From positions 1 to 64,000 of the forward strand of contig NIVC01002818.1 in NCBI GenBank assembly GCA_002269645.1: a DNA stretch of 64,000 nucleotides. Reading direction: 5' to 3'. Positions 38,055-58,275 of this stretch are shown piece after piece. The notes under the pieces were generated by a model. That model was not told where the DNA came from and made no database searches. It worked only from the letters and a program-made list of their open reading frames with translations. Origin of the DNA: Macrostomum lignano. Lineage: Eukaryota. Position 1 is the first letter of the stretch. Every line of letters begins with the position of its first letter. The position numbers and the translations under genes are program-made.

Positions 38055-41000
38055 TCACAGCAGCATGTCGGCAAAGTACTGATCGAACTCCTCCTCTCTG
38101 AAAGCGGATTTGAAAGGCGAAGAAACTGCAGTGAGAAACCTCGGTTTCCATGGCAGAGACCAGCTAGGCTGCAGGCATTTCCACCGCCCCCCCCCCTCAG
38201 AGACCAGCTAAGCTGCAGGCATTTCCACCGCCCCCCCCTCAGAGACCAGCTAAGCTGCAGGCATTTCCACCTGCCCCACCTCAGAGACCAGCTAAATTGC
38301 AGGCATTCCCACCTGCCCCCCCCAGAGACCAGCTAAGCTGCAGGCATTTCCACCTGCCCCCCCTCAGAGACCAGCTAAGCTGCAGGCATTTCCACCTGCC
38401 CCCCCTCAGAGACCAGCTAAGCTGCAGGCATTTCCACCTGCCCCCCCTCAGAGACCAGCTAAGCTGCAGGCATTTCCACCTGCCCCACCTCAGAGACCAG
38501 CTAAGCTGCAGGCATTTCCACCTGCCCCCCCTTAGAGACCAGCTAAGCTGCAGGCATTTCCACCTGCCCCCCCTCAGAGACCAGCTAAGCTGCAGGCATT
38601 TCCACCTGCCCCCCCCCTCAGAGACCAGCTAAGCTGCACAAAATCCACACCTGGACGCGCCCTCATCTTCCACAGCCGGAGCTGGTTGTCGCCAAATTTC
38701 ACTCGCGTCAGCCGCTACCGCGTCTCCGGGCGGCTCCGCTGCTGCCTGCTGCTGCTCTGCTGCCTGCCGGATGGCGCGGATCCCCGCCAGGACTTCGTCC
38801 TCAGCCTCCGTATCGGCGGCTGCGTCAGCTTCGGCTTTGGGTTGCAGCGGCTGCGTTGCCGACTCGGAAAGACGCTGCCGCTTGGCCTCGCGTCTGCGGT
38901 GCCTTCGGGTTCGGCATGCGGCGGGTGCGATGGGTTAGGGTGCCGAGGTGATGATGGCGAGGTGATGATGCTGAGGTGATGATGCTGAGGTGATGACACT
39001 AAGGTGATGATGCTGAGGAAGGGATGCTGAGGTGAGGATGCTGAGGTGATGACACTGAGGTGATGATGCTGAGGTGATGATGCCGAGGCTGAGGTGATGA
39101 TGCCGAGGTGATAATGGCGAGGTGATGATGCTGAGGTGATGATGCCGAGGTGATAATGGCGAGGTGATGATGCTGAGGTGATGATGCTGAGGTGAGGATG
39201 CTGAGGTGAGGATGCTGAGGTGATGATGCTGAGGTGATGATGCTGAGGTGATGATGCTGAGGTGAGGATGCTGAGGTGATGACACTGAGGTGATGATGCT
39301 GAGGTGATGATGCCGAGGCTGAGGTGATGATGCCGAGGTGATAATGGCGAGGTGATGATGCTGAGGTGATGATGCCGAGGTGATAATGGCGAGGTGATGA
39401 TGCTGAGGTGATGATGCTGAGGTGAGGATGCTGAGGTGAGGATGCTGAGGTGATGATGCTGAGGTGATGATGCTGAGGTGATGATGCTGAGGTGTTGATG
39501 CTGAGGTGATGATGATGAGGTGATGAGTTAATTAATTTAAGGTGATGCTAACCAAAGGTAAAGATTTGAGCAGACTAGTTAATGACGCTGAGCAGCTGCA
39601 CCTGTCAATCACTCACTTTTTCTTATAGTTGAGCCGTGCCGAGCAGTCCGGGCAGAGGCGCAGCTTCACCAGCGCATTTTTTGTTTCTCCGCCCTCGGTG
39701 TAGCGAAAGTTCACCTCCCAGCTGACCAGGCCGTCAGCCTGCGGACGGTGAAAATTAGTTCCAATGATTACAGCTAGCTTCCATGGTGATGAAGAAACAA
39801 GAAGGCTGGGATGGGGGGGTCGATTTCACAAGCCCGAAACTTCCTATCGTGGAATTCGAGTTGAGTTAACAAAAAATGACAGCAGTACACATGACCAGAG
39901 GTGAGGATGCTGAGGTGAGGATGCTGAGGTGAAGATGCTGAGGTGAAGATGCTGAGGTGAGGATGCTGAGATGAGGATGCTGAGGTGAGGATATTGAGGT
40001 GAAGATGCCCTAGTGAGGATGTTGAGGTGAAGATGCCCTAGTGAGGATGTTGAGGTGAAGATGCTGAGGTGAGGATTCCCTAGTGATGATGCTGGGAGGG
40101 TGCTAAGTTAGAGATTCTGAGGTGGTCTTAACCACAGCTGTGAGCAGCCTCATAGCGAGGCACTCACCTGCTCGCAGCGCTTCCCGCCGCAGGCGAACTG
40201 CCCCCTGCCGGACAGAACCTCAGCCTCTGTGCGCCATCGCAGGCCGACCCGGCCCTCCTTGTAGCCCCTCAGGTCGGCAATGCAGTACTCCTTGTACAGC
40301 TTGTCCCAGTAGCGCTTGGCGAGCCGCTGCTCCCAGCTACCGGCCTCTTCGGAGCCGCCGTCCCACACGAACCGGTGGTGCTCCCTGATGATGTCGATGT
40401 CTCGCTTGTCGCGCGAGGCGTCCCTTTTGAAGTCAGCGTAGCTGCCGCCGAAGTACCTGGAAATTGGATGGCGCAGATGGGGCCTTTGATCTAAGCTCCG
40501 TGCATGGACCTGTGCTCACCGGAGCCGCGCCTGCGACACCAGCCGAAACCCGAATCCCGATTGGACGATTGGCTTTGATTTTGAGGATAAGGGAGGGTGC
40601 TGACACCCGACTTGAAGACAAGGGAGGCAAAGCTGCTGATTACTGCGAGCTTAGTCAATTAACAGTGGGCTATGCAAGTTAAGCAGAGATGGCTATGGTT
40701 AGTACGCAGCTGAATAGGCTGCTTGTTTACCAGCATGCGGACGGCTACCTGATGTAGTTGTTCACCAGCATCTTGTGCCTCGAATAGGCGTCCATCGCCA
40801 GCAGCTGCTGCCTCCGAGCGCCGGCCTCTTCTCGACAGGCACCGTCGGCGACTGCCACGCCGCCGCTCCGCCGCGGTGCACCAAAGCCGGATGTTGACGA
40901 GGCAGCAGCTGCCCTTGCCTCATCGCGGGGACGCGAGCGCTTCCGGTTGGACACCGAAGCGAGCCGCACGGAGGCGGCGTCCTCCGAGGCTGCCTGGCTG

Positions 41001-41074
41001 ACGGAGTCCTCGAAACCGAAGTCCGACTGCCAGTCATCGGGCCCGACGTCGTTCGCCGTTGGCAACGGCTCGGC
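38055..41074 (-). CDS. FRA10AC1: FRA10AC1 homologue (splicing-associated); exons 41074-40749, 40456-40168, 39738-39617, 38902-38651, 38097-38055; no genomic ATG found
   Basis: Recognised motifs LLAMDAYSRH, DIIREHHRFVW, WEQRLAKRYWDKLYKEYCIADL, LRWRTEAEVLSGRGQFACG, WEVNFRY.E.GETKNALVKLRLCPDC and C-terminal EEEFDQYFADMLL*. Splice phases are consistent. The exon 4 acceptor could alternatively be 9 nt downstream, still in frame. Confidence 0.93.
38155..40090. repeat. FRA10AC1 intronic minisatellites: 42-bp (38155-38635) and GATGCTGAGGTGA-type arrays (38945-39525, 39897-40090)
   Basis: Tandem units visible between the exons. Confidence 0.9.
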
Positions 41075-41406
41075 CTGCGAAGTGGGTTGGGGAGGGGCGG
41101 AACCTGTGGCTGAGGAGGAGCGCAACGACTGGGGACGAGCGGAACCTGTGGCTGGGAGGGGCAGAACCTGACTGGGGAGGGGCGGAACCTATGGCTGGGG
41201 AGGGGGGCGGAACCTGTGGCTGGGGGCGGAACCTGTGGCTCGGGGTGGAACCTGTGGCTGGGGAGGGGTGGGCAAGAAAAACAAGTGGCTATATTTTCAT
41301 ATAAAGGGCCATCAAAGCAACATATAAAATGAGCAGAGCCAACAGAAATCACAAAGCCAAACATGCCAATTCGGGTCAGATTCAGACTCAGATGAGTGCA
41401 TCAGTT

Positions 41407-41412
41407 TTTATT
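41407..41412 (-). promoter_or_regulatory. Candidate polyadenylation signal (AATAAA) of the zinc-finger gene
   Basis: TTTATT on the plus strand, ~410 nt after the stop, followed on the minus strand by a U-rich tract and the FRA10AC1 acceptor. Confidence 0.5.
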
Positions 41413-41820
41413 ATTTTTTTTAACAAATACAGACAGCAAAATGCAATCCAAATATGGTTCAAAGCACACAGAGCGGAGAGTCAGAAAAAGCTACGAGCTG
41501 CTCATTGATTGCTTCGTAGAAACCGTGCATGCGATGAAACTGACGGGCGAATGACTGAGTGGTGCCGGGGCGAATGACTGAGTGGTGCCGGGGCGAATGA
41601 CTGAGTGGTGCCGGGGCGAATGACTGAGTGGTGACGGGGCGAACGACTGAGGGGTGCCGGGAGAACTGGAGCAGAGTGCAAAAGTACAGGACTGACAGGC
41701 TAATAACAGAGCATTCCTTGGCCTCGGCTGTTAGATAATCGAAAACAAAGAGAAGCGCAATACAAATAAGTTATAAATTAAATGTTAATTTTATGATTGG
41801 ATGAGCTGCTTTGCTAACTG

Positions 41821-44674
41821 TCACTGATCCGTGAGAGCAGTCCCAGTCCCAGTCCCAGTTGCTGCAGCCGATGACTCCACGGGAGGCGCATCGGCAGGCG
41901 GCTCCGACATCGTCGTCGCTGCCGCCTCCGAGGCAGTCGACAAGGCCGCCACCGATGTCGGCACTCGCCGCTTCGTCCGCAGCTGCTGCTGCAGCGAGTC
42001 GCTGTCCTCGCTGTCCGCGTCCTGGCTGAAGCAGAGCCCCGGCTGCTCCGCCTCCTCCTGAGCCGCCGCCGGCTTCTGCCGCTTCTGCTGCTGACGGCGG
42101 GCCACCGCGTGCAGCTCGTCGTCGTCCGCTAGCGCGGCGTTCTTCGCCGCTGTCGCCGAGTCCTCGTCGGAGCTGCAGGTTGTCGCAGCGGCAGCGGCGG
42201 CCACAGCGGCGGAGGTCCTGGCGCGCCGCTTCCGCAGCACTTTGCCGCGCTGGCGCTGTCGCTTCGCGTCCTGCACCGGCGACTCCGAAGCGCCACCGAC
42301 CGCGGCGTCCTCGGCGTCGGCAGCGGCGGCCCCGAGTTCGACTTCATCGTCCGCTCGCCGATCCGAGGCGGTCGAGTCCAGCGAGGACGAAATCGAGCGG
42401 CGCTGCGGCTGGCGCGACTTCCGCTTGAGACTCGCCGACGACCCCTGCTGGGCCTGGGCGGCCTCGGCCGGCTGCTGGGGATGCCGGGGCTGCTGAAGCT
42501 GCGGCATGCCGGCCGCGTCGGACTTCTGGCGTCGCCGGGCTGTCCGCTTGGTGCGCCGGTTGCTGACGACAGCGGCGCCGCTGCCACCAGCTGGTCCAGC
42601 GGCGGGGTCGGCGTCGGCAACCGGCAGCGGGGCCTTGAAGCCCGGTGGCTGCGCCTGCGTGCTGCCCGGACCGCCGCCGCTGATGCCGCCTTCGCCTGTT
42701 GTTGAAGCCGCGGCTGCTGCGGCTGCCGCTGCGGCCGCCTTCCTCTTGCGCTTCCTCTCGCCGTCAGCGCCGCCGCCACCGGAGGCGGAGCAGATCAGCA
42801 GGTGCTCATCGGCAGCCTCGCTACTATCGAAGATTCTGCCGCAGTTGTGGCAGGTGAGCTGCGGGTGGCTGGCCCTGCGGTGCTGCAGCAGCAGGTGCTG
42901 CATGCGGAAGGACAGGGTGCACACGCCGCACTGGTAGGCGTCGCTGGCAGGGTCGTGGCAGTCCACCTTCAAATCCTTCAGACGAACCTGCGGGTCAAGG
43001 AGGGAAAAGCAGATTCAATCAACTAATACCGGTAAATCGATTAATCAACCAACTAATCAATCAATTAATACATGTAAATCAATCAGCTAATCAGTCAATC
43101 AATAAACTAATCAGTCAATCAATAAACTAATCAATCGATTAATCAATTAACTAATCAATCGATTAATCAATTAACTAATCAACCAATCTATCTATCTATC
43201 AATCATCCAATCAATCATTAAATCAATCAATCAATCATCTAAGTAGTCGAATAATCCATCAATCAATCAACTAATAAGTTAATCAACTAATCAGTCAATC
43301 AATCAATCAATCAGTCATCTAAGTAGTCAAATAATCCATCAATCAATCAATCAAGCCCAGTACTCACAGAACACCCAAGAAACAAAGACTAATTGCCTCA
43401 CCTTGTGTTGAGAGATCACGTGATCGGACAGGTTGCGCACCTGCTTCTGGCACACAGGGCACTCTTTAGTCACCCGGGGCGACTCGTGGATCTGCTTGAT
43501 GTGGCTGACCAGGTTTTGCTTGCCCTTCAGGCTGGCCTGGCAGTGCGGGCAGGGGAAGCAGCGGCTCTCGGAGGTCTGGCCGTGCACCCGCTGCCTGTGC
43601 ACCGCCAGGAGCCGCTCGCTGCTGAACACCTTCTTGCACACTTCGCAGGAAATCTCGTCCCAGACCTCGGCTGCGACCGATTTGGAGGCTGAGGCGGGGA
43701 CAGCGGACGCCGGCAGCGGCTCCTTGTGCACCGCGGCCATGTGGTTGCGCAGCAGGTAGAGGCGCTTGAAGTGGTGGCCGCAGAGGCCGCACTGGTGCGA
43801 TTCGACTGGGTGTACATTGTGAAGGTGGACCCGCAGCCGGTACTCCGAGTTGAACTCCTTGCCGCAGGCCTGCGGTGCGACGGTTCGGGGGTCCGTTTGG
43901 GATTATCAGGCAGCCCAGCAACTGAGGATCTGGGAGGCTGGAACAGCAACTGAGGATCTGGGAGGCTGGCCCAGCAACTGAGGATCTGGAAGGTTGGCCC
44001 AGCAACTAAGGATCTGGGAGGCTGGCCCAGCAACTGAGGATCTAGGAGGCTGGCACAGCATCTGAGGATCTGGGAGGCTGGCACAGCATCTGAGGATCTG
44101 GGAGGCTGGCAAAGCAACTGAGGATTTGGGAGGCTGGCCCAGCAACTGAGGATCTGGGAGGCTGGCCCAGCAACTGAGGATCTAGGAGGCTGGCCCAGCA
44201 ACTGAGTAAATCAAAGCAGGCAGGCGATTTAACCTCGCAGGGATGCGTGCCGGTATCAGAGAAGCCGTGCAGGTAGTGCATGTGCTGGATCAGTTTGATG
44301 TGGTGGTTGAACAGGTTGACGCCGTCGCACAGATGGCAGCGCAGCAGCTTAGTGTGTTTGGCCATGACGTGGGCTGTCAGCTCGCGCAGGATGCCGTCGC
44401 TCTCGGCTACTTTGATGCGTCGCCGTCTGCTGCCACCGCCACCGCAGTTGAAATCGTCAGCGCCACTCCGAGTGTCAGAGTCGGAGCAGAACGGGCAGCT
44501 GACGGGGTTTTGAGCAGGTTGAAAATCAGTAACTCGAAATTTACAAATCTGCAAACAGACAGAGGCAGGCAGACAGACAGGCAGATAGACAGACAGACAG
44601 ACAGACAGACAGGCAGACAGGCAGATAGACAGACAGACAGACAGGCAGACAGACAGACAGACAGGAAGGCAGGC

Positions 44675-44705
<31 letters not shown>

Positions 44706-47700
44706 GACAGACAGACAGGCAGACAGACAGGCAGACAGACAGGCAGATAGACAGACAGACAGACAGACAGGCAGATACAGACAGGCAGACAGGCAGACAG
44801 ACAGACAGACAGACAGACAGGCAGACAGACAGACAGAGAGACAGACAGGCAGACAGGCAGGCAGGCAGGCAGGCAGACAGAAAAACACTCAGTGTCACAA
44901 ACCCGGCGGCGGGCTGCACGCTGGCACAGCAGAGCACCACGAAGGCCACGCAGCGGGTCAGATCGTAGGGCAGCAGCCGCCAGCGCAGCAGGTCCGGGCA
45001 GCCGAGGCCCCGCTCGTGCAGCTGGTCGAAGTCCAGCAGGCCGGGGCGCAGCGGCTCCGTGGTTGGCGGCAGCCGCAGGTCCGGGGCGGCCCGCTTCAGC
45101 AGGGCGTGCACCCGGCGCACCCGCTTGTCGCAGAACTGTGCGTAGCCGAGCAGCAGGAACAGGTCCACCCGGCGGCCGCGCTGCCGCCGCTGCTCCGGCA
45201 AGTCCTCGTCCTCCGCCTTCTCTTCCGCGGCTGAGGTTGGCGGCTCCACAACCAGCAGCAGGCGGAGGTTCGGCCACGGCCGGGCCAGCCAGAGGCCTTC
45301 GAACTGGCGGTCGGAGGTGCTGGCCAGCAGGCCGGAGACCAGCTCGTTCAGGCGGTAGTCGGCCAGGGCCCGCTGGGAGCTGCGAAATGGAAACATATGC
45401 ACATGGGGTCACTGAGCTGCTGATCAAGGAGGGCAGTCGAAAAGGTGCAAGACGATGAAATTGATGGAGTTGATGAGCGAGGTGCAGAGATGATGAAGAT
45501 CGGTGCGGATGTTCCTTGCCAGTCTGGCGAGTTGAGAGGTGGCATGGCACGGATGTTTGGGGATGGGAACCAAATTCAGGCCACGTGATTTCGTCGTGAT
45601 TCCACCCATCTCCGGATGGTCAAGCGCCTGGAACTTCCTCAAGGAAGGCTCGTTATCATTGCATGGCGGCTGGCGCAGCGTTTTGCGTTACCTGCTGCAG
45701 TAGGGGGGGAGGACTCACGACTAAAAGGTCGGGGGTTCGATTCTCGACCCACTCAGAACAATTTGTGTCCTTGAGCAAGACACTTAACTCTGCATTGCTC
45801 TACTCAAGATCTGCTGTTTTACACTTGATGAGATTTGATGAGATCCGGCATTGATAGAAGACTAACCCTTACCTGAACTCCTCCACGCTCAGTGGCGCGG
45901 CCGGCTCCTCGTCACCTGAGGAGCCGCCGACTTCCTCGCCGTCGCCCTCTTCATCCTCGTCGTCGTTGTCATCTTCGTCCGCCGCGCCGCCGTGTCTGTC
46001 GCGACGTCCACCGAAGCCAAGGCCGAAGTCGAGGCCTTCAAAGCTGCCAGCAGCTCCTCCGCCAGCAGCCTCGACGCCGCCTTCGGATTCGTGCCGCCGG
46101 CGCTGCTGCAGCCTCAGCAGCTGCTTCTCGTCATCGAATCCGTAGCTTGCCGCCGAGCCCGCAGCGGCGTCGGGATTGTCGAAGCAGTCGAAGCCGGCAT
46201 CAAATTCGTCCCACTGCTCGGGAGTGGCTGAGGAGGCCTTCACGTTCAGCATGGCGAGCAGCTTGCCGAACACCGAGGCTCCGCCGGTGCCCACGATAGC
46301 GTCGGCGTCGGAAGCGGCAGAGACAGCGGCGGTGTCGGCAGTTTCTACTGCTGCTGCAGCGGCGGTGTCGGCAGTTGCTGCTGCTGCAGCGCCGCAGTAG
46401 TCGGTGTCGACGAGGTCGGGCTGCTCCTTGACGAGCTGATCGACAGCCGCAGGCGAAGGTTTCGACGGCTGCTGCTCTGGCTGTAGAACTGCATCAAAGG
46501 ATCAGAGAGCAGTACTGCTTGGATTGATGCGGAGAACTGGGGGGGGGGGTTGAGAAAGCAAAATGGGAATTAGGACAGACTATGAGGAATTAGAGAATAC
46601 AAAAAGGGATCTGAAGAAACTACTAGGGGATTTCTGTGACTATAAATGGGGATCAGTGGCTTTAGATGGGGATCAGTGGCTACAGATGGGGATCAGTGGC
46701 TACAGATGGGGATCAGTGGCTATAGATGGGGATCAGTGGCTATAGATCAGTGGCTATAGATGGGGATCAGTGGCTATATATGGGGATCAGTGGCTATAGA
46801 TGGGGATCAGTGGCTACAGATGGGGATCAGTGGCTAAGCGGGCAAGTGAGCAGGGAGATCTCCGGCCACTCACTCGGCTCCTCAACTGTCAGCACCTCGT
46901 GCCGCTCGGCACGGACATCGACCAGCTCCACGGGCCGGAAGCCGGGCGGCGGCCTGCCGAAGCGCATGCCCAGCAGGCGCCTGTAGGGCTGCTGCATGAG
47001 GAAGGCGCGGCCTTCAAGGAGGCCACCGGATTCGTCCATCAGGCTGTCCAGCTGCCGCATGTAGGCGTCAGAGACTACGCAGAGGCCGCGAACGGGCCAC
47101 CTGGCCTGGTCCATGGTGGCGAAGGTGGCCGGGTCATCCGCCAGGTACTTGCCCCAGGTGGTGGCGCCGCGGGGCAGCGTCATGGCCGAGCCCACCTGCG
47201 GCAGGCGGTCGCAGCCGGAGGCCGGCTCGAACAGCTCGCGGCAGAACTCGAACGAGCAGGTGAGCATGGACAGGTAGACGGAGCTCGGGTCAGACGACTC
47301 GGCAGCGGCCAGCCCGGCCAGAAGGCGGCGGTCCCTGTCCGACGGGCGCTGCCTGGCGAACCTGGCCAGGAAGCCGGGCTTCGGGCGCACCAGGCCGCGC
47401 CGATGCAGCAGCAGGCTGGTGAGGTTCAGCGGCGCCCCGGCCGAGGACGGCGCCGTTGACGGCTCGGACAGTCGGCGCCGGATGTCCGAGTCGTCCGGAC
47501 AGCAGGTGAGGGAGCCGAGACTGCGCCGGATGTAGCAGTCGGGGGGCACCGGCTGCACTGCGTTGGGGCCGCGCTGCTGCGATGACGGCGAGCGGCGGCG
47601 GCGTCGGCGGCGAGGCTGCGGCATCTCCTGAGAGGATGAAGCGTCGCCTGCGGGGGCAGCTGCGGGCTCGGGGGGCGGCTCAGCTGGCTGCTCTTCGTCC

Positions 47701-47714
47701 TGGTCTGACGACAT
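41821..47714 (-). CDS. Large multi-C2H2 zinc-finger protein (~1290 aa); exons 47714-46874, 46488-45873, 45379-~44903, ~44498-44234, 43869-43402, 42987-41821
   Basis: C2H2 fingers CHLCDG...HMHYLH, CEACGKEF...HLHNVH, CGLCGHHF...HMAAVH, CEVCKKVF...HRQRVH, CPHCQ...HIKQIH, CGVCTLSF...HRRASH. Phase-compatible junctions. The exon 3/4 boundary is ambiguous (44903/44498 or 44899/44548). Confidence 0.82.
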
Positions 47715-47985
47715 TGCGCTGCGGGAAGGAGGAGGCGGCTAATGACGATTGCAGATAGGCTAATGGTGATTCCAGATAGGCTAATGGTGATTCCAGATAG
47801 GCTAATGGTGATTTCAGATAGGCTAATGGTGATTTCAGATAGGCTAATGGTGATTCCAGATAGGCTAATGGTGATTCCAGATAGGCTAATGGTGATTCCA
47901 GATAGGCTAATGGTGATTCCAGATAGGCTAATGGTGATTCCAGATAGGCTAATGGCGATTGCAAATTGGCTAATGGCGATATTGA
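43015..47985. repeat. Zinc-finger-gene repeats: (AATC)n 43015-43352, 28-bp 43912-44205, (AGAC)n 44556-44880, 20-bp 46650-46836, 21-bp 47738-47985
   Basis: Tandem units visible; one array per intron or spacer. Confidence 0.9.
45661..45830 (+). mobile_element. tRNA-derived SINE with CORE/V-like central domain, in a zinc-finger gene intron
   Basis: A-box TGGCGCAGCG (45671), B-box GGTTCGATTCT (45734), then TGTGTCCTTGAGCAAGACACTTAAC, which resembles the conserved CORE/V-SINE motif. Confidence 0.6.
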
Positions 47986-48179
47986 ACGGGCTAACACAGA
48001 TTTTACAAGCATATTTAGCTAATTTGAATTCTATTGAAAGCTACTGAATCTGCTAGACTGGCCATAAAAGCTGGAATTGAACATCCTGAATGAGTAACAA
48101 GACTAAATAGAACAAAGACAGCACGGTGGTAGGCAAGGAGCCTAATGAAGAATCCTATTTGTATTAATAATTATATATA

Positions 48180-48185
48180 TTTATT
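48180..48185 (-). promoter_or_regulatory. Candidate polyadenylation signal (AATAAA) of NDUFB9
   Basis: TTTATT on the plus strand, ~225 nt downstream of the NDUFB9 stop. Confidence 0.5.
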
Positions 48186-48408
48186 TAGTATGGTTTCCAC
48201 CGCGTACAATCGAATACGCAGTCGTTAATAGCTAAGATGGTAAAGAATTTCCTGTTTTTCTTAAATCTACATTTTTAAGCTACTAGAAGTAGTCAGGTGG
48301 ATTATTAGACACTCTTAGCCTACATAAAAGAAACTAAGCGATCTGATACGTTGGAGGGGAACTGTTGGTATCCAGCGCAGTCATCCGCACACACTGGGAG
48401 CTGGCCAG

Positions 48409-48885
48409 TCAGCCCATCGGCCCCGTCCACTCGCCGGTGTCCCTGGCGTCTTGGCCGTATTTCTGGTGCCAGCGCTCGATGTACTCCTTCTTGCGCTGCT
48501 CCCGCCTGGCAAAGTAGTCCGGGTACTGCGCCTTCTCCAGCGGGTGCCACAGGTCCAGAAGCGCGTCCGGGTAGTACTGCCAGCGGCCGAAGGCCACGCC
48601 GCCGGGGTCGTTGGGCCAGCGGAAGGGGAAGTAAGACTTCTTGGCCTGCAGCTCCGAGTAGGCGGACTCCAGCAGAGCCTTGGCCTTGATCGGGTCCTCA
48701 ACTTCGCGGTTCTCGTCGAAGCGCTGGCGCAGCAGCACGGCGTGGTAGCGGTAGTCCAGGCGCTCGTGGTGCTTGGCCCGCACCTCGTATAGGGCGGCCT
48801 TGTACAGCCGGCACACCTTCTGCGCATGCGACAGGTAGCTGGTGCGCAGGTAGGCTGGGAGCGGCGGACCGGGGAGGGTCGGCAT
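48409..48885 (-). CDS. NDUFB9: NADH dehydrogenase (ubiquinone) 1 beta subcomplex subunit 9 (LYR family), single coding exon, 158 aa
   Basis: SHAQKVCRLYKAAL LYR motif, YRYHAVLLRQRFDEN, PGGVAFGR, LDLWHPLEKAQYPDYFARREQRKKE; GC3-rich codons. Confidence 0.95.
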   Translation of the reverse strand: MPTLPGPPLPAYLRTSYLSHAQKVCRLYKAALYEVRAKHHERLDYRYHAVLLRQRFDENREVEDPIKAKALLESAYSELQAKKSYFPFRWPNDPGGVAFGRWQYYPDALLDLWHPLEKAQYPDYFARREQRKKEYIERWHQKYGQDARDTGEWTGPMG

Positions 48886-49009
48886 GGCTGCTCAGCTGAG
48901 TCTACTGCCGATTGCTCTTTCAGCTTGGATAACTGCTAGGGCTGGGATCCGAGTGCGGCAGCCGCTGCTGCTGCTGCAGGTGGAGAGATGTGGTTGATCT
49001 ATCAGGTGT

Positions 49010-52000
49010 GGTATGGGGTCTATCAGATTGCAATACGGGATCTATCAGATTGAGGTATGGGATCTTCAGATTGGGGTATGGGATCTATAAGATTGCGGTA
49101 TGGGATCTTCAGATGGGGTATGGGATCTTATGATTGGGGTATGGGATCTTATGATTGGGGTATGGGATATTATGATTGGGGTATGGGATCTTATGATTAG
49201 GGTATGGGATTTTCAGATTGGGGTATGAGATCTATCAGATTGGGGTATGGGATCTTCAGATTGTGGTATGGGATCTTCAGATTGGGGTATGGGATCTTCA
49301 GATTGAGGTATGGGATCTTCAGATTGGGGTATGGGATCTTCAGATTGGAGTATGGGATCTTCAGATTGAGGTATGGGATCTTCAGATTGGGGTATGGGAT
49401 CTTCAGATTGGAGTATGGATCTTCAGATTGGGGTATGGGATCTTAAGATTGGGGTATGGGATCTTCAGATTGAGGTATGGGATCTTCAGATTGGGGTATG
49501 GGATCTTCAGATTGGAGTATGGGATCTTCAGATTGGGGTGTGGGATCTTCAGATTGGGGTATGGGGTCTTCAGATTGGGGTATGTGATCTTCAGATTGGG
49601 GTATGGGATCTTCAGATTGGGGTATGTGATCTACAGATTGGGGTATGAGATCTATCAGATTGGAGTATGGGATCTTCAGATTGGGGTGTGGGATCTTCAG
49701 ATTGGGGTATGGGGTCTTCAGATTGGGGTATGGGATCTTCAGATTGAGGTATGGGATCTATCAGATTGGGGTATGGGATCTATCAGATTGAGGTATGGGA
49801 TCTATCAGATTGGGGCATGGTATTTATCAGATGGGGTATGGGATCTATTAGATGGGGTATGAGATCTTCAGATTGGGGTATGGGATCTTCAGATTGGGGT
49901 ATGGGATTTTCAGATTGGGGTATGGGATCTTCAGATTGGAGTATGGGATCTTCAGATTGGGGTATGGGATCTATCAGATTGAGGTATGGGATCTATCAGA
50001 TTGGGGTATGGTATTTATCAGATGGGGTATGGGATCTATTAGATGGGGTATGGGATTTATCAGATGGGGTATGGGATCTATTAGATGGGGTATGGGATCT
50101 ATTAAATGGGGTATGGGATCTTAAGATTGGGGTATGGTATCTGTCAGATTGGATAAAACAACTGAAGCAATTAGGTAAATAATAAAAGTGAGCTCAAGCA
50201 GTAGGACGAAGCACTGTTAGAATCGACCTATTATTAAATCTATGCATATCAGTGCTAAAATGTACGAGCTAATGTAATCAGTAGTCTGGCTGGACAAAAA
50301 TTGAATAAAATTCGCATAGACGTCAGCCAGAAGGCGGACAAGACTGTACAATGCCGGGATAGCGCCACAAACTGCCTATGGTAGAAAACGAGTCGCAGTA
50401 TCATTATAATAAAAGACACGGGTTGGCTGTAAAGGCGAAACGCCGCAATGAAGCATGGCTGCAGTGGACTAATGGCAGCCGCACATGCTACTCACAGTAA
50501 TATTAGCAGCATATATGCATAAAACGAGAAATAACAGCGTATAGCAGTTTAACAACAGGATACAATGTTACAGCTCGGCAGGGCGAACAGGGTAAAACTG
50601 ATAATAGGTCAATATTGAAGCTCCATCAACTAAAACGTTTTGTGTGGATTCAGCATTCTGGGATCTGGGAGATTTAAATCCCAAACTGAGGATCTGGGAG
50701 ATTTATATCCCAAGCTGAGGATCGGGGAGATCTATATTCCAAGCTGAGGATCTGGGAGATTTATATCCCAAGCTGAGGATCTGGGAGATTTATATCCCAA
50801 GCTGAGGATCGGGGAGATCTATATCCCAAGCTGAGGATCTGGGAGATTTATATCCCAAGTTGAGGATCTGGGAGATCTATATCCCAAGCTGAGGATCGGG
50901 GAGATCTATATTCCAAGCTGAGGATCTGGGAGATTTATATCCCAAGCTGAGGATCTGGGAGATTTATATCCCAAGCTGAGGATCTGGGAGATTTATATCC
51001 CAAGTTGAGGATCTGGGAGATCTATATCCCAAGCTGAGGATCGGGGAGATCTATATTCCAAGCTGAGGATCTGGGAGATTTATATCCCAAGCTGAGGATC
51101 TGGGAGATTTATATCCCAAGCTGAGGATCTGGGAGATCTATATCCCAAGCTGAGGATCTGGGAGATCTATATCCCAAGCTGAGGATCGGAGAGATCTATA
51201 TCCCAAGCTGAGGATCTGGGAGATCTATATCCCAAGCTGAGGATGCGGAAGATCGATATCCCAAGCTGAGGATGGGGAAGATCTATATCCTAAGCTGAGG
51301 ATCCAAAAAATAATATTTCCAAATGGGATCTCGGATATCTGGTGTCGCCACATCACATTTCTGTTCGACTCAGATCAGCCGTCGTCGGGCCTCTCCCCGC
51401 CGGCCGAGGCCTCGCCGTCCTCGTCCTCATCGGACTGCATCCTGGCCCTGAGCACGGCCTCGAACTCGTTGTAGTGCATCTTCCGCTTCAGCCGGAACTG
51501 CCGCCGGCGCTCTCGCTCAGCGGCGTCCAGCAGCTCGTCCTCGGCGTCCAGGTCGTGCAGGTCGGCCGGGCCGCCGAAGCCGCGTCGATTCGGCGAGGCA
51601 GACTCGCCGCCGCCAGCAGCAGCCACGGCACCGGCATCGCCGTCCTCAGCAGCCGCGGCCTCCTCGAGACGCTCCATCAAAGCGTCTGGCGACACGGCGT
51701 CGGTGAAGCTGGTCCGGCGCTGCTGCGGCTGCTTCGCCGGCTGCTCGGAGGCCGCCGGGCAGCTCCTCGAGTCGGCGTCGCCTTCGTCGCCGCTGGCAGT
51801 CGAAGCCGCGTCGCTGGACAGCGCCGGCTCGTAAGGGGTCGGCGCTTCGTCCACCTGCCGGGGCGGTGATGCACAGATTCATCTAGATCCCAGATTTACC
51901 TAGATCCCATACAGATTCACCTAGATCCCATACAGATTCACCTAGATCCCATACAGATTCACCTAGATCCCATACAGATTCACCTAGATCCCATACAGAT

Positions 52001-52105
52001 TCACCTAGATCCCATACAGATTCACCTAGATCCCGTACAGATTCACCTAGATCCCATACTGATTCATTTAGATCCCATACAGATTCACCAAGATCCCATA
52101 CAGAT
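49010..52105. repeat. 21-bp (GGGGTATGGGATCTTCAGATT, 49010-50150), 29-bp (CTGAGGATCTGGGAGATTTATATCCCAAG, 50655-51305) and 21-bp (CCTAGATCCCATACAGATTCA, 51875-52105) minisatellites
   Basis: Tandem units visible. Confidence 0.93.
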
Positions 52106-52616
52106 TCATCTAGTTCCTATAGACCCTCTCAGATCATAATACAGATTCCACCGATTCCTATACCCTCTCCCAAATCCCGTAAGAATCCCTCAGATCCGAT
52201 ACAGATTTCCCGGATCCTATAGATTTCCCAGAATCTTAGAACTTCTCAGGCCCTAAAGATTGCTCAGATCTCAGACTACACTGATCTTATAGATTCCCCA
52301 GATCCCATTTTACCTTTATCTTATAGACTGCTCAGACCCTATGGAATCTTGTGAATTCCCAGGCACTACACACGTGACATAAGCCGACGCCCACCTTCAT
52401 GTGCCCATAGTCCTTATCCGCAGGATGGTAAGTCTTCAAGATGTTCATTTCGTCCCACTGGAACTCTTTCCTGGCGTCGGTGTCATCAGAGTTGCCGATA
52501 GCGGCAGCAGAACTGGCAGCTTCCTGACTGTCCTCGTGCTCATCAGTGCTGATGGATTTGCACTTGAGGATGCCCTTCTTTGGCCGGGCATTCAGCGGCG
52601 GCGGGCTGTTTGACAT
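51375..52616 (-). CDS. PPP1R2: Protein phosphatase 1 inhibitor 2; exons 52616-52395 and 51854-51375 (233 aa)
   Basis: PKKGILK (SILK-type) motif, [23 protein letters not shown]|[19 protein letters not shown]; phase-0 GT-AG intron. Confidence 0.95.
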
Positions 52617-54032
52617 CTGACTGATTGACAATGACAGGGGAATGACAGCTGGAATGCCAGTCAGCAGGGTGACACTGCAGCAATTAGTAAGGAGGATGAA
52701 ATCAACATCAACTTGCGTAGAGGTAAAAACAAGCGTGAGCTTACACTGCTACTCGTATATAATTTCATAATGCTTCACTACCATGAAAACCTGTTTATAT
52801 ACTAAGAATATGATTAATATGCTGTGCTTAATTTCTAATTTTACTTTTAACCTAACCAAATTAATCAATCACGAAATGCATATTTATGCTAGCCATGTGA
52901 TATTAAAGAGCAAGATTGAGAATAAAAGTGGAATTGTATTGAAATTATCACAATATAATCCAAAAGTACAATGTCAGCTCAAATAATCTCTTATACATTG
53001 TTGATGCACTTAAATCCTAATTTGCTTTTTGGTGCCCTAGAGTGATTTTTGCCTTTATGGCTAACTTTTTATATACAAGTAAAATATTAATACTTTATTT
53101 AAATACAAAACTGATAGGTCTATATTATTTTATTAAACATGCCTATTAGTAACAGCAATTTTTTAATTCCAAACTTTCTACCAAATGTTAAATTTGTAGA
53201 CCCCAAAATGTTATAAGGCCAAGAAAATGACTGACATTAAATTGGGCAAGATCAAACCAAAAATAAACAAAAAACCAAGAGTAGGCTAAGGTTGATACTT
53301 AACAACTAAGATTATTATAATTTATACTTAAAAATAACTATAAATGCCATGGTTTTCAAATATCAAAGTCACTAAAATATTAGTAATGTTAATTACAATT
53401 GGCTAATTTACCAGGTAAAATGATTGCTAGAAAATTATAAAATTGAAAATCTATATGATAGCTGAGTAGCATTACATTAGCCTAGCTAAAGATGGGAAGA
53501 AACTGAAATTTTTTAACCAATTCAATTTGATTTAAATATCTGACAATCAATTCAAATATCAGATAATACTAAATATGGTTATATCAGTGAATAACATCTC
53601 TTTGGTGGCCTTTAACCAATAGGCCATCATCTTTACTTCTTGTTCAATGAAAATGCATTTACCCCTCTAAGTTTATGGGAATTAGCACCTCCAAATCCAT
53701 GCTCAACTTGATTCCTAATCTTTCACTTTTCCTTAAAGCTTCAAATCTAAATACAATTTACATGCAACTGCTTTTAAATCACCCCTGCCTTTCCTTAAGA
53801 CATGCTATGTATTATCATTTCCTTAATTTTCTCTCCATATTTATGAGCCACAAGCTGTCCAAAACCCCTAGCACTTCACTTTGGTCTTTTACTCTTCAAA
53901 ATCAAACTTCTCAGCCCTCTACTCTTTCTAAAGCCTTTTTAAATCTTAACACAAAATGATTTATTGTTATATCTCTAATCAAAAATGCGACTTACATGTA
54001 AAAAAACCCAAAAGCAAAATCAACGCAACCTT

Positions 54033-54096
54033 GGGTAAACGGCAGGAGTAACTATAACTGTCTTAATAAGCCAAAATGTCTCGTCAGCTACTTAGT
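54033..54096 (+). other. Diverged 28S rRNA fragment (helix 69-71 region, R2/I-PpoI target), copy 1
   Basis: GGGTAAACGGCAGGAGTAACTATAACTGTCTTAATAAGCCAAAATGTCTCGTCAGCTACTTAGT versus the conserved 28S GGGTAAACGGCGGGAGTAACTATGACTCTCTTAAGGTAGCCAAATGCCTCGTCATCTAATTAGT. Confidence 0.85.
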
Positions 54097-54961
54097 ACTA
54101 CTACTTGGGTGTTTTTTCGGGTGGGCATTTTTGCGACTTCCTTGGTTGGCCGCCAAATCGGTCGGCCAGATCGGCCGACTCGGCCGACTGTTGCGCATGT
54201 ATGTCTCTAATCCTTTTGCCTTTCCTCATAGCACAACTATCCCTAATTCTTTTCCTTCATTTATAAGCCACAACATCAATACTTTACTCTTAATTTGTTT
54301 CAAATAATCTTTCCACATCAAAGCAATTATTTGGCATTTTCTTGTAGATTGTCAACTTTTTCATTCCAATTTGAACCAAATATTCTAAATATTCATCCTA
54401 TCTCTAAACCTAGCATAGGCCTACCTATTTATTGATAAAACAATATCTAAAATTGTTTTTTATTTCTAGAATATAAAAACCATATAACACTTTTAGAAAG
54501 AAGAAAGAGAAAGAAAAGAAAAGAAAAAAAAGCAAAAAATCATATACAAAGTGAAAATTAAGTTGCAATTGGAAGAACTAAGTTGCAATCAAGAGGAACT
54601 AAGTCACAATCAGGAGGAACTATATCACAATTTGGAGGAACTAAGTCACAATCAGGAGGAACTACGTCACAATTTGGATGAACTAAGTTGCAAATCTGAA
54701 CAAAACTAAGTTGCACCAGACGGGTGAAATTTTAAGGTTGGGCATGTAAGTATATTCCCACATTTACACAATATTGATTCAAAGTTGGAGCCAAAATACA
54801 CGTAAACTTCTATTTAAAATAGAAAAATTATGCAATTTTTTAAAATATATACCAATGGTGTTTTTCTCTTTGTTGTATTATCCAAAATGGCATAAAAACA
54901 GGACAAAACAATGATCTCATTTCCAGCTCTTCCTACAACTCCAGTAATGGCACTGATTTTT

Positions 54962-55025
54962 GGGTAAATGGCAGGAGTAACTATTACCACTGTTTTGTAA
55001 GAAAGTGATTTGTCATCTAATTAGT
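54962..55025 (+). other. Diverged 28S rRNA fragment, copy 2
   Basis: GGGTAAATGGCAGGAGTAACTAT...TTGTCATCTAATTAGT; the middle part is more decayed. Confidence 0.7.
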
Positions 55026-55182
55026 CAAGTTGATTTTAATTTTACCATCAAGTTTCATTGCATTGGGCATTATGTGTTTATAAGCATGTATGTACATGAA
55101 TACACTTGGCTATATGGCTTATTTTTTATCGTAAAAGCAACTTAACTATGAAAGAAGAATAAGCAAAGTTAATGTAATGTTT

Positions 55183-55245
55183 GGGTAAATGGTAGGAATA
55201 ACTATAACTGTATTATAAGGGCTAAATGCCTTATCAGCTAATTAG
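55183..55245 (+). other. Diverged 28S rRNA fragment, copy 3
   Basis: GGGTAAATGGTAGGAATAACTATAACTGTATTATAAGGGCTAAATGCCTTATCAGCTAATTAG. Confidence 0.7.
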
Positions 55246-55705
55246 GCCCTAATACTACTTTTAGAATTTTTTGAATGGGCATTTTTGCAGCTTACCTTGG
55301 CTGGGCCCCTTGCCAGCCAGCTAGATTGGCTTGGTATTGCATCTAGATGATCTATATAAGGACAAAAGTGGCATAATCCTGTATTAATCCATATATTAAA
55401 AATGGTCTATCAGTAGGTAGGTATGTGTGTGATTGATTCTAGAAAAAATGGCTGAACTGATTTTCTTCACACTTGCACTATTCAATCAGAATTATAGTCT
55501 AAGGATTAAAATTCCAATATATAGCATATTACTTTTTGAGAATAAAAAGAAAAACTATTAGTTGTATTTTGCAAAGCACTAATGCAAAAACATCTACTAA
55601 AAATGCTAAAAATGACATATTAGGAATGAAAATCCACCGAATAGTTCAATAGTTATATCATCATATGTCATGTAACTGGCCTATAAGGATTAGGTTGGTT
55701 AGGCT

Positions 55706-58275
55706 ATGTATTGGTTTCCCGACAGACATTTAGACAGACATTCAGAAATCATTCAGTAAATGTTTAACAAAATTGTCTATTTAGTACACAAGACAATGTA
55801 ATTTTTTAGATGTTTTTATGCATGTCTCTGCTTTAAAAAGACACATCAGACACACACAAAGACGCTTCACAAGCTGAGATATTCCCTAGCAAATGTTGTT
55901 ACGACGTTTCCCAATATACCGAATACCATATATGGTTGTTTTTTGAGGAGCCGCTACATCGTTGCACTTTGCTCTTTCTGAATAAAAATTGCACAACTGC
56001 TTGACGCATGTCTCTACTTTAAAAATACATCTTAGACACATACAAAGACACTTCACAAGCTGAGATATTCCCTAGCAATGGTTGTTAAAACATTTTCTAG
56101 ATATACCAAATGCTATTTGAATCATATAACCATTTTTTCAGAAGCTGCACATGCTCTTTCTGCATGAAAATTGCACTGCTGCTTTACACATGCCTCACTA
56201 TAAAAAGACACATTAAAGACAAACAAAGATGCTTCACAAGCTGAAGTATTCTTTAGCAACAGTTGTTCCAATGTTTTCTAAATACTTAGTATACCGAATG
56301 CCTGTCTTTGGCATTTGCATGTTTTCTAGTTGTTCGGTGGGCGATTTTGCTTACCTTTGTCGGAGCTGTCAATTGCAAATCACTTCGAGACTGATTTGCT
56401 TCTGCAGTAAGCAGATTGATTTCTTAAAGTGATACCTGATACTCTCCAGTCATAATTGTTTCTTTTTGGAAGACTCAGCAGAGTTGCAAATTTTATTTTC
56501 CATTTTGAGAGTTAGGTCTTACTTTTTTCTAGTAGTTGTTTGACAACTTTGCTATCTCAATGACTTGTGACAATCAGGTATAGTTGACACTCTAGACAGG
56601 CATGCGGAATCTCAAAAAGTTACATTTACTTGCAATTCTTTCAGGGCTGTTTTTGTTGCTTCCTTTGCTTCCTTGTGTTGCTTTTTTGCAATGTTTAAAT
56701 ACTACCTAGCATTTTTACATTTGCTCTCAATAATCTTAACTTAATAATAATAATAGTAGTACAGTATATTGCTGTAGCAATGTTCCTATATGATACAAAA
56801 TCCCACCACTTCCACCAAAGTTGACGTAGGGGTTACTTCTGTCCTTATAAATAATTTCACAATGCCACCAAAGTTGTGATAGGGGTGAGCTTCCCTTTAT
56901 TGATTAATGTACTTTTGTATTAATGTACTTATGCTTATTGGTAGCATGCCTATTTCTCTATCTACTTCTATATTAGTAGCATATACTTATCTTATTGGTA
57001 GTGTCTATACATGTACTGTACTCTTTGGCCTAAGCAGTTTAATGACACTGTCTACTTATTTACTCTTATAAGTTTTTTCTCAGTCCTGGGCATTCCCTAG
57101 ATCAGAGGGTCACAACCTTATGAATTTTCCTTGCCTTGAAGCGATTTTTCTGCTCTGATGCACTTTCTTGCTAATTAGCCGGCTTTTTAATACTACTCCT
57201 AATTTGGGGATTTACTCTAGGAAATGAATAAGTCTTTACAAGTTTTGCAAATAAGTTTTTTAGAACTAGATTGGCTATTATTCTCGCTATTTGGGGTGAA
57301 CGAGGAAGTTCCATGTTAACTTCTCCTGGCCCATTCTGGGCTCCTATTTATACTACCTATACAGTGTATTTAAAACAAAAAGTTATTTGGTAAAATATTA
57401 TTTGATTTTACAACATTTAAACAAATGTAAAAATAATTTCTTTTTTTGCATAAATTCAAATATGGTACTTTCTAGGAAATGTTTTGTGAATGTATTTAAT
57501 ACTTATACTAGAAGGCCTTATACTATAAAATGAAGCACACTACATCAATATAATCATGGTAATATTAGTAATAATAACAGTACAGTAACATTAATAGTAA
57601 TAGCATTAATATTAATAATATTTTGATTTAAATAAATAATACCTATCTATTAAAAAATAATAATATTAATAAAAATAGCTTTTGGTGTACTAAGTATTTA
57701 GAAAACATCGTAACAACCATTGCTAAAGAATATCTCAGTCTATGAAGTGTCTTTGTTAGTCTTTAATGTGTCTTTTTATAGCAAGAAATGCATAAAGCGG
57801 CAGTGCAATTTTCATGCAGAAAGAGCATAACTTCTGAAAAAATGGTTATATGATTCAAACAGCAACATCAAACAGCATTTGGTATATCTAGAAAATGTTG
57901 TAATAACTATTGCTAGGGAATATCTCAGCTTGTAAAGCATCTTTGTGTGTGTCTAATGTGTCTTTTTAAAGTATACATGCCTAAAACAGCTGTACAATTT
58001 TCATTCAAAAAGAGCAAAGTGTGACAATGTAGTGGCTCTTTAAAAAGCAACCATATACATATTTGGTATATTGGGAAATGTCGTAACAACCATTGCTGGG
58101 GAATATCTCAGCTTGTGAAGTGTCTTTGTGTGTGTCTAGGATGTATTTTTAAAGTAGAGACATGCATAAAAAAGTCTAAAAATTTACATTGTCTTGCATA
58201 CTAATTAGACAATTTTGTTAAACATTTACTGATCAATTTCTGAATGTCAAAATGTCTATCAGGAAACCAATACAT
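55706..58275. mobile_element. Foldback-type non-autonomous DNA transposon with ~590-bp inverted arms built of ~180-bp subrepeats
   Basis: 55706-~56295 is the diverged reverse complement of ~57681-58275 (both ends read ATGTATTGGTTTCC). Subrepeat ACAAAGAC.CTTCACAAGCTGA at ~55856, 56042, 56223. Flanks GGTTAGGCT / GGTTAGGAC resemble an imperfect 9-bp TSD. Confidence 0.75.

What the first reader, a model, noticed from the sequence alone, without database searches (positions are those of the whole stretch)
41060..41412. FRA10AC1 lacks a genomic start codon; a spliced-leader AUG would supply it exactly in frame
Seen: the first exon starts at CTTCGCAG|GCC GAG CCG (41074) on a codon boundary. The first in-frame ATG lies inside the conserved AMDAY motif, about 95 codons downstream. 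Upstream there is only a minisatellite, a U-rich tract and the previous gene's AATAAA, with no GTAAG/GTGAG donor. Established: the flatworm spliced leader ends in AUG, which can act as the initiator Met. Inference: the protein begins M-AEPLPTANDVG with the Met donated in trans, making translation dependent on trans-splicing.
Basis: partly seen in the sequence, partly recalled or inferred. Interest (0 to 1): 0.8.

Follow-up and report, generated by a model that had tools for sequence, protein, structure and literature searches.

The report
Start codon donated by spliced leader
The flatworm Macrostomum lignano's FRA10AC1 gene has no usable start codon in the genome and almost certainly gets its ATG from the trans-spliced leader RNA, a mechanism known in flatworms since 2006, so this is a clean but ordinary example.

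Summary
On the minus strand, FRA10AC1 exon 1 begins at TCGCAG|GCC GAG CCG (first base 41074). Upstream there is an in-frame TAG 39 codons away and no ATG in the last 226 nt. The first in-frame genomic ATG is codon 94, inside AMDAY, and two out-of-frame ATGs precede it.

The window is Macrostomum lignano contig NIVC01002818.1. GenBank annotates this gene and two homeologous copies as 5'-partial, each starting exactly at AEPLPTANDVG.

The 93 ATG-less codons are coding:
- They carry the metazoan-wide D-[YW]-x-S-[DE]-F motif.
- They line up one residue short of other animals' "MAxx" N-termini.
- The four differences between homeologs are all third-position.
- They keep their frame against a related species' transcript, whose similarity starts exactly at a homologous acceptor (ttTAG|GCG GAG CCG).

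The published M. lignano leader ends ...TTGCATG, so SL-ATG|GCC is in frame.

I found no read that spans the SL junction, so use of the acceptor and initiation at the SL AUG are inferred.

Use of the SL AUG as initiator Met is established in flatworms (Cheng et al. 2006; Echinococcus and Schistosoma surveys). The neighbouring zinc-finger gene in this window shows the same pattern. I class this as a new member of a known kind, of low interest.

The parts
41075..41080 (-). 3' splice acceptor TCGCAG, the proposed SL trans-splice site. The 40 nt upstream are 67% pyrimidine.
   Evidence: GenBank CDSs of three homeologs begin at the next base. The homologous acceptor ttttag|GCGGAGCCG is present in the related-species transcript L001.
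40749..41074 (-). FRA10AC1 exon 1 (AEPLPTANDVG...NNYI-R). It holds 93 codons with no in-frame ATG before the AMDAY Met.
   Evidence: It is coding: 57 of 87 aligned residues are identical to L001 and the frame is kept. All 4 homeolog differences lie at third codon positions. The D-[YW]-x-S-[DE]-F motif is conserved across Metazoa.
40793..40795 (-). First in-frame genomic ATG (Met of AMDAY, codon 94).
41035..41037 (-). First genomic ATG in exon 1. It is out of frame (+1) and opens a 91-codon ORF that overlaps the AMDAY ATG. A second +1 ATG lies at 40923-40921.
41189..41191 (-). In-frame TAG that closes the CDS frame 39 codons upstream of the acceptor.
41088..41268 (-). Outron minisatellite (~19-23-nt unit, CCAGCCACAGGTTCCGCCCC-like). 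About 180 nt here and about 1 kb in two homeologs. It contains no ATG and many CAG| decoy acceptors.
41273..41284 (-). U-rich tract TTGTTTTTCTTG.
41347..41364 (-). Rival candidate micro-exon ATGTTTGGCTTT (MFGF) plus a weak donor GTGATT.
   Evidence: It lies only about 45 nt downstream of the upstream gene's AATAAA.
41407..41412 (-). AATAAA poly(A) signal of the upstream zinc-finger gene, whose CDS stop is at 41821-41823. It is the only one in the intergenic interval.
40168..40456 (-). FRA10AC1 exon 2.
   Evidence: Colinear with the spliced transcript L001. Pfam PF09725, E = 2.7e-50.
39617..39738 (-). FRA10AC1 exon 3.
38651..38902 (-). FRA10AC1 exon 4. The acceptor at 38902 is used in GenBank and in L001. 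An alternative acceptor 9 nt downstream, at 38893, is used in the UniProt model.
38055..38097 (-). FRA10AC1 exon 5 with the stop codon (…EEEFDQYFADMLL*).

Best explanation
This is the M. lignano FRA10AC1 gene, the last gene of a same-strand cluster: LYR-motif protein, then C2H2 zinc-finger protein, then FRA10AC1. The cluster looks like an operon.

Proposed mechanism, step by step:
1. The zinc-finger mRNA is cleaved after the AATAAA at 41412.
2. The downstream RNA has no cap and no cis donor upstream of the acceptor at 41075-41080.
3. The SL snRNP donates its capped 35-nt leader (…UUGCAUG) to that acceptor. The outron, including a length-variable minisatellite, is discarded.
4. The mature mRNA begins SL…UUGC-AUG|GCC-GAG-CCG. 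The leader's terminal AUG is the first AUG and is in frame.
5. That AUG starts a 344-aa protein, M-AEPLPTANDVG…. Its Met is probably then removed because Ala follows it.

Without the leader, a scanning ribosome would first meet an out-of-frame AUG at 41037. So full-length FRA10AC1 depends on trans-splicing.

Shown here: the gene structure, the missing genomic ATG, the coding status of the N-terminal region, the conserved acceptor position, and the leader sequence (from the literature).

Inferred: SL addition at this exact site, initiation at the SL AUG, and polycistronic transcription.
For: 1. Gene model and frame.
2. Organism and leader: searches show the window equals NIVC01002818.1. The SL ends ATG|GTAAG (PMC8629364).
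3. GenBank CDSs PAA55039, PAA84184 and PAA79370 are all 5'-partial and begin at AEPL, immediately after the CAG. The annotation pipeline cuts transcripts at SL-read peaks where such evidence exists and then runs TransDecoder. A neighbouring gene confirms that these partial CDSs start at the transcript's 5' end.
4. The N-terminal region is translated. In alignment A1, AEP falls in columns 2-4 under MAxx of other animals, and the DY.S.F motif is conserved. Against the L001 relative, 57 of 87 residues are identical, differences are biased to the third position (24/21/39), and net indels keep the frame. Four of four homeolog SNPs in exon 1 are at third positions.
5. L001 reads ttTAG|GCG GAG CCG, an in-frame stop made by the acceptor itself. 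It has no ATG in the 57 nt upstream and none in frame before AMDAY. Identity is 49% upstream of the acceptor against 73% downstream.
6. No GTRAG donor and no ATG lie close upstream.
7. Operon-like spacing: 338 nt from the AATAAA to the first exon base, about 180 nt of it minisatellite. This matches the published repeat-adjusted mode of about 100 bp, and the three-gene synteny holds in all three homeologous contigs.
8. Precedent: the SL AUG is used as initiator Met in Schistosoma and Echinococcus.
Against: - No SL-junction read or SL-bearing contig for this gene could be retrieved. No literature table lists it.
- The last six nucleotides, TCGCAG, only partly fit the enriched trans-acceptor motif [T/C]TNCAG.
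- A '5'-partial' annotation does not always mean SL. One paralogous IPP-2 model is partial without any AG in front of it.
- The SL AUG has a U at position -3, which is a weak Kozak context by vertebrate rules, so some leaky scanning is possible.
- A Paragonimus orthologue has a genomic ATG, so dependence on the SL is not general for flatworm FRA10AC1.
Confidence: 0.8

Rival explanations
1. Translation starts at the genomic AMDAY Met (40795). This would give a 250-aa protein, and the 93 upstream codons would be 5' UTR.
For: It is the first in-frame genomic ATG and has a good context (gcgATGg). An automatic gene caller chose this Met in the related transcript (P0002).
Against: The upstream 93 codons behave as coding sequence. 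The metazoan DY.S.F motif is conserved, the frame is preserved against L001, and all homeolog differences are at third positions. Two out-of-frame ATGs whose ORFs overlap 40795 come first. An SL AUG, if present, would be met first and is in frame.
Confidence: 0.06
2. A cis-spliced upstream micro-exon supplies the Met. The candidate is ATGTTTGGCTTT|GTGATT at 41364-41347, joined to 41074, giving MFGF-AEPL….
For: It is the only phase-0 ATG-plus-donor pair with a 5/6 match to GTRAGT in the intergenic region. It is conserved in the homeologs, but so is all the flanking unique sequence.
Against: The donor lacks the +5 G and the exonic AG. The ATG lies only about 45 nt downstream of the upstream gene's AATAAA, which leaves no room for a promoter. 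The RNA-seq-based GenBank models at three loci show no such exon. The related transcript runs straight into outron-like sequence ending in ttttag and shows no upstream exon. Metazoan N-termini align without four extra residues.
Confidence: 0.05
3. The mRNA is trans-spliced or capped at or near 41074 but starts translation at a near-cognate codon, for example TTG at codon 4 or ACG at codon 6. Alternatively the SL joins another acceptor such as 41128, which adds 18 residues.
For: Near-cognate codons are present in GCC GAG CCG TTG CCA ACG. Acceptor 41128 also leaves the SL ATG in an open frame.
Against: An in-frame AUG at the very 5' end would be used first. AEP is conserved in the relative and similarity stops exactly at the acceptor. 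The annotation places the 5' end at 41074 in all three copies.
Confidence: 0.05

Closest known systems
Flatworm SL 3'-terminal AUG used as initiator methionine. Source: Cheng, Cohen, Ndegwa & Davis 2006, J Biol Chem 281:733, as cited in PMC12582326, PMC5832876 and PMC3512318. Echinococcus granulosus survey: PMC3510090.
   Same: The leader ends in AUG. The acceptor lies on a codon boundary. There is no nearby genomic AUG. The conserved N-terminus is complete only if the SL Met is counted. This is the same argument used for 4 of 8 E. granulosus cDNAs and for 35 S. japonicum genes.
   Different: Here the host is a free-living macrostomorph rather than a neodermatan. The gene (FRA10AC1) is not named in the papers read here. 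In vivo use of the SL AUG is not shown for this gene.
M. lignano SL trans-splicing and operons (Wudarski et al. 2017, PMC5730564; Ustyantsev & Berezikov 2021, PMC8629364).
   Same: The 35-nt SL is the same. The gene is conserved between worm and human, as are about 70% of SL-spliced genes. It sits less than 1 kb (repeat-adjusted) downstream of a same-strand gene, with simple repeats inflating the intergenic distance.
   Different: Those papers, as read here, do not discuss the SL ATG as a start codon. The GenBank models simply leave such CDSs marked 'partial'.
slORFs: ORFs created by SL-borne start codons (Song et al. 2023, PMC9851317).
   Same: It is the same concept: an ORF whose start codon sits in the leader.
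   Different: That survey covered nematodes, ascidians and euglena with Ribo-seq. No flatworm Ribo-seq was used.
FRA10AC1 / Pfam PF09725. From my own knowledge, not tested here: a nuclear protein associated with the spliceosome in humans.
   Same: Full-length Pfam match, E = 2.7e-50. Identity to animal orthologues is 42-50%. The C-terminal EEEFDxYFxDMxL motif is conserved.
   Different: There is no genomic initiator codon. The Paragonimus orthologue has one.

Membership tests
SL-AUG-initiated flatworm mRNA (Cheng et al. 2006 class) | The organism's spliced leader exon ends in AUG, immediately before its GU donor. | tested here: met
   The published M. lignano SL is …TTGCATG followed by GTAAG. 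The window is M. lignano. No SL RNA gene lies in the window itself.
SL-AUG-initiated flatworm mRNA (Cheng et al. 2006 class) | The first exon begins at a 3' splice acceptor with no cis donor upstream (an outron). | tested here: met
   TCGCAG|G at 41075-41080. No GT[AG]AG in the 745 nt upstream. The acceptor position is conserved in L001.
SL-AUG-initiated flatworm mRNA (Cheng et al. 2006 class) | SL-containing reads or cDNAs are joined at that acceptor. | not testable with these tools
   Support is indirect only: three GenBank models start at this base. Searches for junction-bearing sequences found nothing.
SL-AUG-initiated flatworm mRNA (Cheng et al. 2006 class) | The SL AUG is in frame with the main ORF, with no stop in between. 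| tested here: met
   The acceptor is in phase 0 and the ORF is open from 41074 through a 343-codon CDS.
SL-AUG-initiated flatworm mRNA (Cheng et al. 2006 class) | There is no alternative in-frame AUG near the 5' end, and the conserved N-terminus needs the SL Met. | tested here: met
   The next in-frame ATG is codon 94 and two out-of-frame ATGs precede it. The N-terminus aligns one residue short of MAxx orthologues.
SL-AUG-initiated flatworm mRNA (Cheng et al. 2006 class) | Initiation at the SL AUG in vivo. | not testable with these tools
   This needs Ribo-seq, N-terminal proteomics or a reporter assay.
FRA10AC1 (Pfam PF09725) | A match to the Fra10Ac1 domain above the gathering score. | tested here: met
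   169.9 bits against a cut-off of 27. Residues 128-243 cover profile positions 2-118 of 118.
M. lignano operon, downstream gene (criteria of Ustyantsev & Berezikov 2021) | A same-strand upstream neighbour, a repeat-adjusted intergenic distance below 1 kb, and an SL-trans-spliced downstream gene. | tested here: inconclusive
   Orientation and distance are met: 338 nt from the AATAAA to the first exon base, about 180 nt of it minisatellite. The synteny is conserved in three homeologs. The SL status of the gene is inferred, and no polycistronic RNA was seen.

The most novel reading that the evidence does not exclude
Dependence on the SL AUG is an old, conserved feature of Macrostomum FRA10AC1, with the same acceptor codon in two species. 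The copy-number-variable outron minisatellite (about 9 units here, about 50 in the homeologs) would then not be inert. Its roughly dozen CAG| decoy acceptors nearly all put the SL AUG out of frame or before a stop. Acceptor choice within the array would therefore set how much translatable mRNA is made for a spliceosome-associated protein, coupling the cell's trans-splicing fidelity to production of a splicing factor.
Probability: 0.05. Interest if true: 0.5.

Novelty: new member of a known kind. Interest (0 to 1): 0.2.

Why it matters
This matters mainly for annotation. GenBank and UniProt list M. lignano FRA10AC1 as a 5'-partial protein. It is most likely complete once the leader's Met is added, giving 344 aa. 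The neighbouring zinc-finger gene is left partial in the same way, so this may be a wider issue in the annotation. A pipeline that prepends the SL ATG at mapped trans-splice sites would probably turn many "partial" models in this model organism into complete ones.

For biology, it is one more case where a conserved gene cannot make its full-length protein without trans-splicing. It extends a pattern documented in parasitic flatworms to a free-living, early-branching flatworm. It does not reveal a new mechanism.

Tried and rejected
- Two homology searches aimed at 5' fragments, one with the N-terminus alone and one with the first 143 aa, were meant to find Logan transcript pieces carrying the leader. 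The first returned nothing and the second returned only P0002. Neither even returned the identical GenBank protein, so the word index evidently does not cover this low-complexity region.
- An exact-pattern scan of JGI metagenome contigs for the predicted junction TTATTGCATGGCCGAGCCGTTGCC found no matches. That collection is unlikely to hold Macrostomum cDNA.
- Searches of text and supplements for Mlig005215, FRA10AC1 and SRR28338165 in the M. lignano papers found nothing. The Wasik 2015 PNAS paper is not held.
- There is no SL RNA gene and no Rfam family in the window.
- I considered a functional role for the outron minisatellite. I set it aside because similar minisatellites fill this gene's introns, the neighbour's 3' UTR and the neighbouring intergenic region, and because published work attributes such repeats to neutral accumulation.
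- The species behind L001 could not be identified. I call it a relative only on the basis of 76-78% protein identity.

Full report
**What is there**

The feature lies on the minus strand. Reading 41900→39800 in reverse complement shows ...cccacttcgcag|GCC GAG CCG TTG CCA ACG.... The first exon base is 41074.

I assembled a five-exon model:
- E1 41074-40749
- E2 40456-40168
- E3 39738-39617
- E4 38902-38651
- E5 38097-38055

All introns are GT...AG. The model encodes 343 residues. It matches Pfam Fra10Ac1 (PF09725) at E = 2.7e-50 over the whole profile.

**Checking the observation**

- In the CDS frame the nearest upstream stop is TAG at 41191-41189, 39 codons up, with no ATG in between.
- No ATG in any frame occurs in the 226 nt before the acceptor.
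- The first in-frame genomic ATG is 40795, codon 94, the Met of LLAMDAY.
- That ATG is not the first ATG of the exon. Two +1-frame ATGs (41037 and 40923) open ORFs of 91 and 53 codons that run past it.
- The interval back to the upstream gene's stop (41821) contains one AATAAA (41412-41407), no ATTAAA and no GT[AG]AG.
- It also contains a U-rich tract (41273-41284) and a minisatellite (41088-41268).
It is the best of ten phase-compatible ATG-plus-GT combinations.

**Organism and existing annotation**

The spliced protein is 99% identical to PAA55039.1, [quoted passage not shown]. The fetched locus is an exact substring of the window, so the window is NIVC01002818.1 in its own coordinates.

That GenBank protein and two homeologous copies (g4 and g5, on other contigs) all start AEPLPTANDVG, the codon directly after the CAG. 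An older UniProt model starts two codons earlier, SQAEPL, and so reads through the acceptor.

According to Wudarski et al. 2017, gene boundaries in this annotation were set where possible from peaks of SL-containing reads and from poly(A) reads. ORFs were then called with TransDecoder.

A neighbouring gene shows that these 5'-partial CDSs begin at the transcript's 5' end. In one homeolog the zinc-finger CDS starts one base after cccgcag|.

The annotation therefore places the FRA10AC1 mRNA 5' end at 41074-41076, right at an acceptor, in three loci. This evidence is indirect. One partial model nearby (IPP-2, L008) is not preceded by an AG.

**Is the ATG-less N-terminal region really translated?**

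Three independent lines say yes.

1. Alignment with eleven animal orthologues puts AEP under columns 2-4 of N-termini that read MAER, MAAN, MAHE and MAVN. The acidic D-[YW]-x-S-[DE]-F motif falls in the same place, about 15-20 residues in. The protein is therefore one residue short, and that residue is the Met.
2. A spliced Logan transcript contig from a related species (L001, SRR28338165, about 76-78% protein identity) aligns across codons 1-93. Of 87 aligned residues, 57 are identical. Nucleotide differences at codon positions 1, 2 and 3 number 24, 21 and 39. Net indels preserve the frame.
3. The homeologs differ from the window copy at four exon-1 sites (positions 84, 165, 189 and 246). All four are third codon positions, and the proteins are identical there.

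**The acceptor is conserved and marks the edge of conservation**

L001 reads ...ccgccggttttag|GCG GAG CCG CCG.... It has an acceptor at the homologous codon, and its own TAG is an in-frame stop. There is no ATG in the 57 nt upstream and none in frame before AMDAY.

Identity between the two species is 27/55 upstream of the acceptor and 224/308 downstream. The contig keeps outron sequence and also runs past its AATAAA, so it probably includes precursor reads. It shows no cis-spliced 5' exon.

**The leader**

Ustyantsev & Berezikov 2021 give the single M. lignano SL as CGGTCTCTTACTGCGAAGACTCAATTTATTGCATG. In the SL RNA gene it is followed by GTAAG. Wiberg et al. [quoted passage not shown]

Joined to 41074, this gives ...TTGC ATG GCC GAG CCG. 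That is in frame and is the first AUG of the mRNA.

**Context**

FRA10AC1 is the third gene of a same-strand cluster:
- a Complex1_LYR gene (48885-48409, with a genomic ATG)
- a 1272-aa C2H2 zinc-finger gene (47699-41821)
- FRA10AC1 (41074-38055)

This order is conserved on all three homeologous contigs.

The distance from the zinc-finger AATAAA to the first FRA10AC1 exon base is 338 nt here and about 1155 nt in the homeologs. The difference is mostly minisatellite copy number. Without the repeat, roughly 150 nt remain.

This fits the published picture of M. lignano operons, with a repeat-adjusted mode of about 100 bp and a threshold of 1 kb. It leaves little room for a separate promoter.

**Most likely mechanism (confidence about 0.8)**

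1. A polycistronic or read-through transcript is made.
2. The zinc-finger mRNA undergoes 3' cleavage.
3. The SL is trans-spliced at 41075/41074 and the outron is discarded.
4. Scanning ribosomes initiate at the SL AUG.
5. The product is M-AEPLPTANDVG…, 344 aa.

Removal of the Met before Ala is an inference from general N-terminal processing rules.

The rivals are each rated at or below about 0.06, for the reasons given in their entries:
- initiation at Met94 only
- the MFGF micro-exon
- near-cognate initiation or use of a different acceptor

**Comparison with what is known**

Use of the flatworm SL's 3'-terminal AUG as initiator Met was established by Cheng et al. 2006. It is restated in several papers read here.

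In E. granulosus, 143 of 187 SL-bearing clusters were full-length only when the SL ATG was counted. Some of them strictly needed it to match conserved N-termini, and the trait was reported as conserved across Neodermata. "slORFs" are a named concept.

Within this very window, the zinc-finger gene's annotated CDS also starts directly after a CAG (47699). There the SL ATG would replace a genomic ATG that lies 15 nt upstream.

The FRA10AC1 case is therefore a well-supported new instance of a known kind. It is not universal for the gene, because the Paragonimus kellicotti orthologue has a genomic ATG.

**Verdict**

Novelty is low. The practical value is in fixing "partial" annotations.

Noticed in passing
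window 47699-47718 (- strand); L008 11358: The upstream zinc-finger gene has two acceptors 19 nt apart: cccgcag|CGCAATGTCGTCAGACCAG|GACGAAG. The window copy's GenBank CDS starts at 47699, after the second CAG. That cuts off the in-frame genomic ATG at 47714-47712, so an SL ATG would replace it in frame. A homeolog's CDS starts at the first acceptor. There the genomic ATG is kept and the SL ATG would be out of frame, opening a ~13-codon upstream ORF. This looks like alternative trans-splice sites that switch between genomic and SL-donated start codons.
   Followed up: partly
window 38055-48885 (- strand): Three same-strand genes lie close together: Complex1_LYR (48885-48409), C2H2 zinc finger (47699-41821) and FRA10AC1 (41074-38055). 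The gaps between coding sequences are about 710 and 747 nt. The order is conserved on three homeologous contigs. This is a probable operon.
   Followed up: partly
window 41088-41268 and 41545-41661; L002/L003 2200-4000: Both the outron minisatellite and the 23-nt minisatellite in the zinc-finger 3' UTR are several-fold longer in the two other homeologs (about 1 kb against 180 nt, and about 500 nt against 117 nt). The unique flanks are nearly identical. Repeat copy number has therefore changed quickly since the genome duplication.
   Followed up: partly
window 38154-38638, 38941-39526, 39898-40076; also about 47730-47960: FRA10AC1 introns 2, 3 and 4 each consist largely of a minisatellite (14-nt units in introns 2 and 3, a 42-nt unit in intron 4). 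The LYR-to-zinc-finger intergenic region carries another one (~23-nt unit) directly upstream of the zinc-finger acceptor.
   Followed up: no
window 38893-38902 (- strand): Exon 4 has tandem acceptors 9 nt apart: ccgaag|GCACCGCAG|ACG. GenBank and the related transcript use the upstream one (…KKKHRRREAK…). The UniProt model uses the downstream one (…KKKREAK…).
   Followed up: partly
L003 about 4860 (homeolog g5, NIVC01000639.1): This copy has GGGG where the other two have GGGGG in exon 2. The result is a frameshift and the truncated 213-aa GenBank protein PAA79370. It is either a homopolymer assembly error or a decaying homeolog.
   Followed up: partly
window about 52000-62000: This block is AT-rich (32-40% GC, against 50-65% elsewhere). 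No gene is annotated in the part whose annotation was listed (48886-58885). The two homeologous contigs carry an IPP-2 (phosphatase inhibitor 2) gene upstream of the LYR gene in the corresponding region. This could be an insertion or a loss.
   Followed up: no
L001 1-57 and 1200-1260: The related-species transcript contig has its introns removed, yet it keeps outron sequence at the 5' end and about 57 nt beyond its AATAAA at the 3' end. That suggests cis-splicing can come before trans-splicing and 3' cleavage, or that the contig mixes precursor and mature reads.
   Followed up: no
L005 1501-1570 (Paragonimus kellicotti): The trematode orthologue starts at a genomic ATG in a 24-nt first coding exon (MAANRPEE), followed by a ~46-nt micro-intron. 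Dependence on the SL AUG for this gene is therefore specific to certain lineages.
   Followed up: partly
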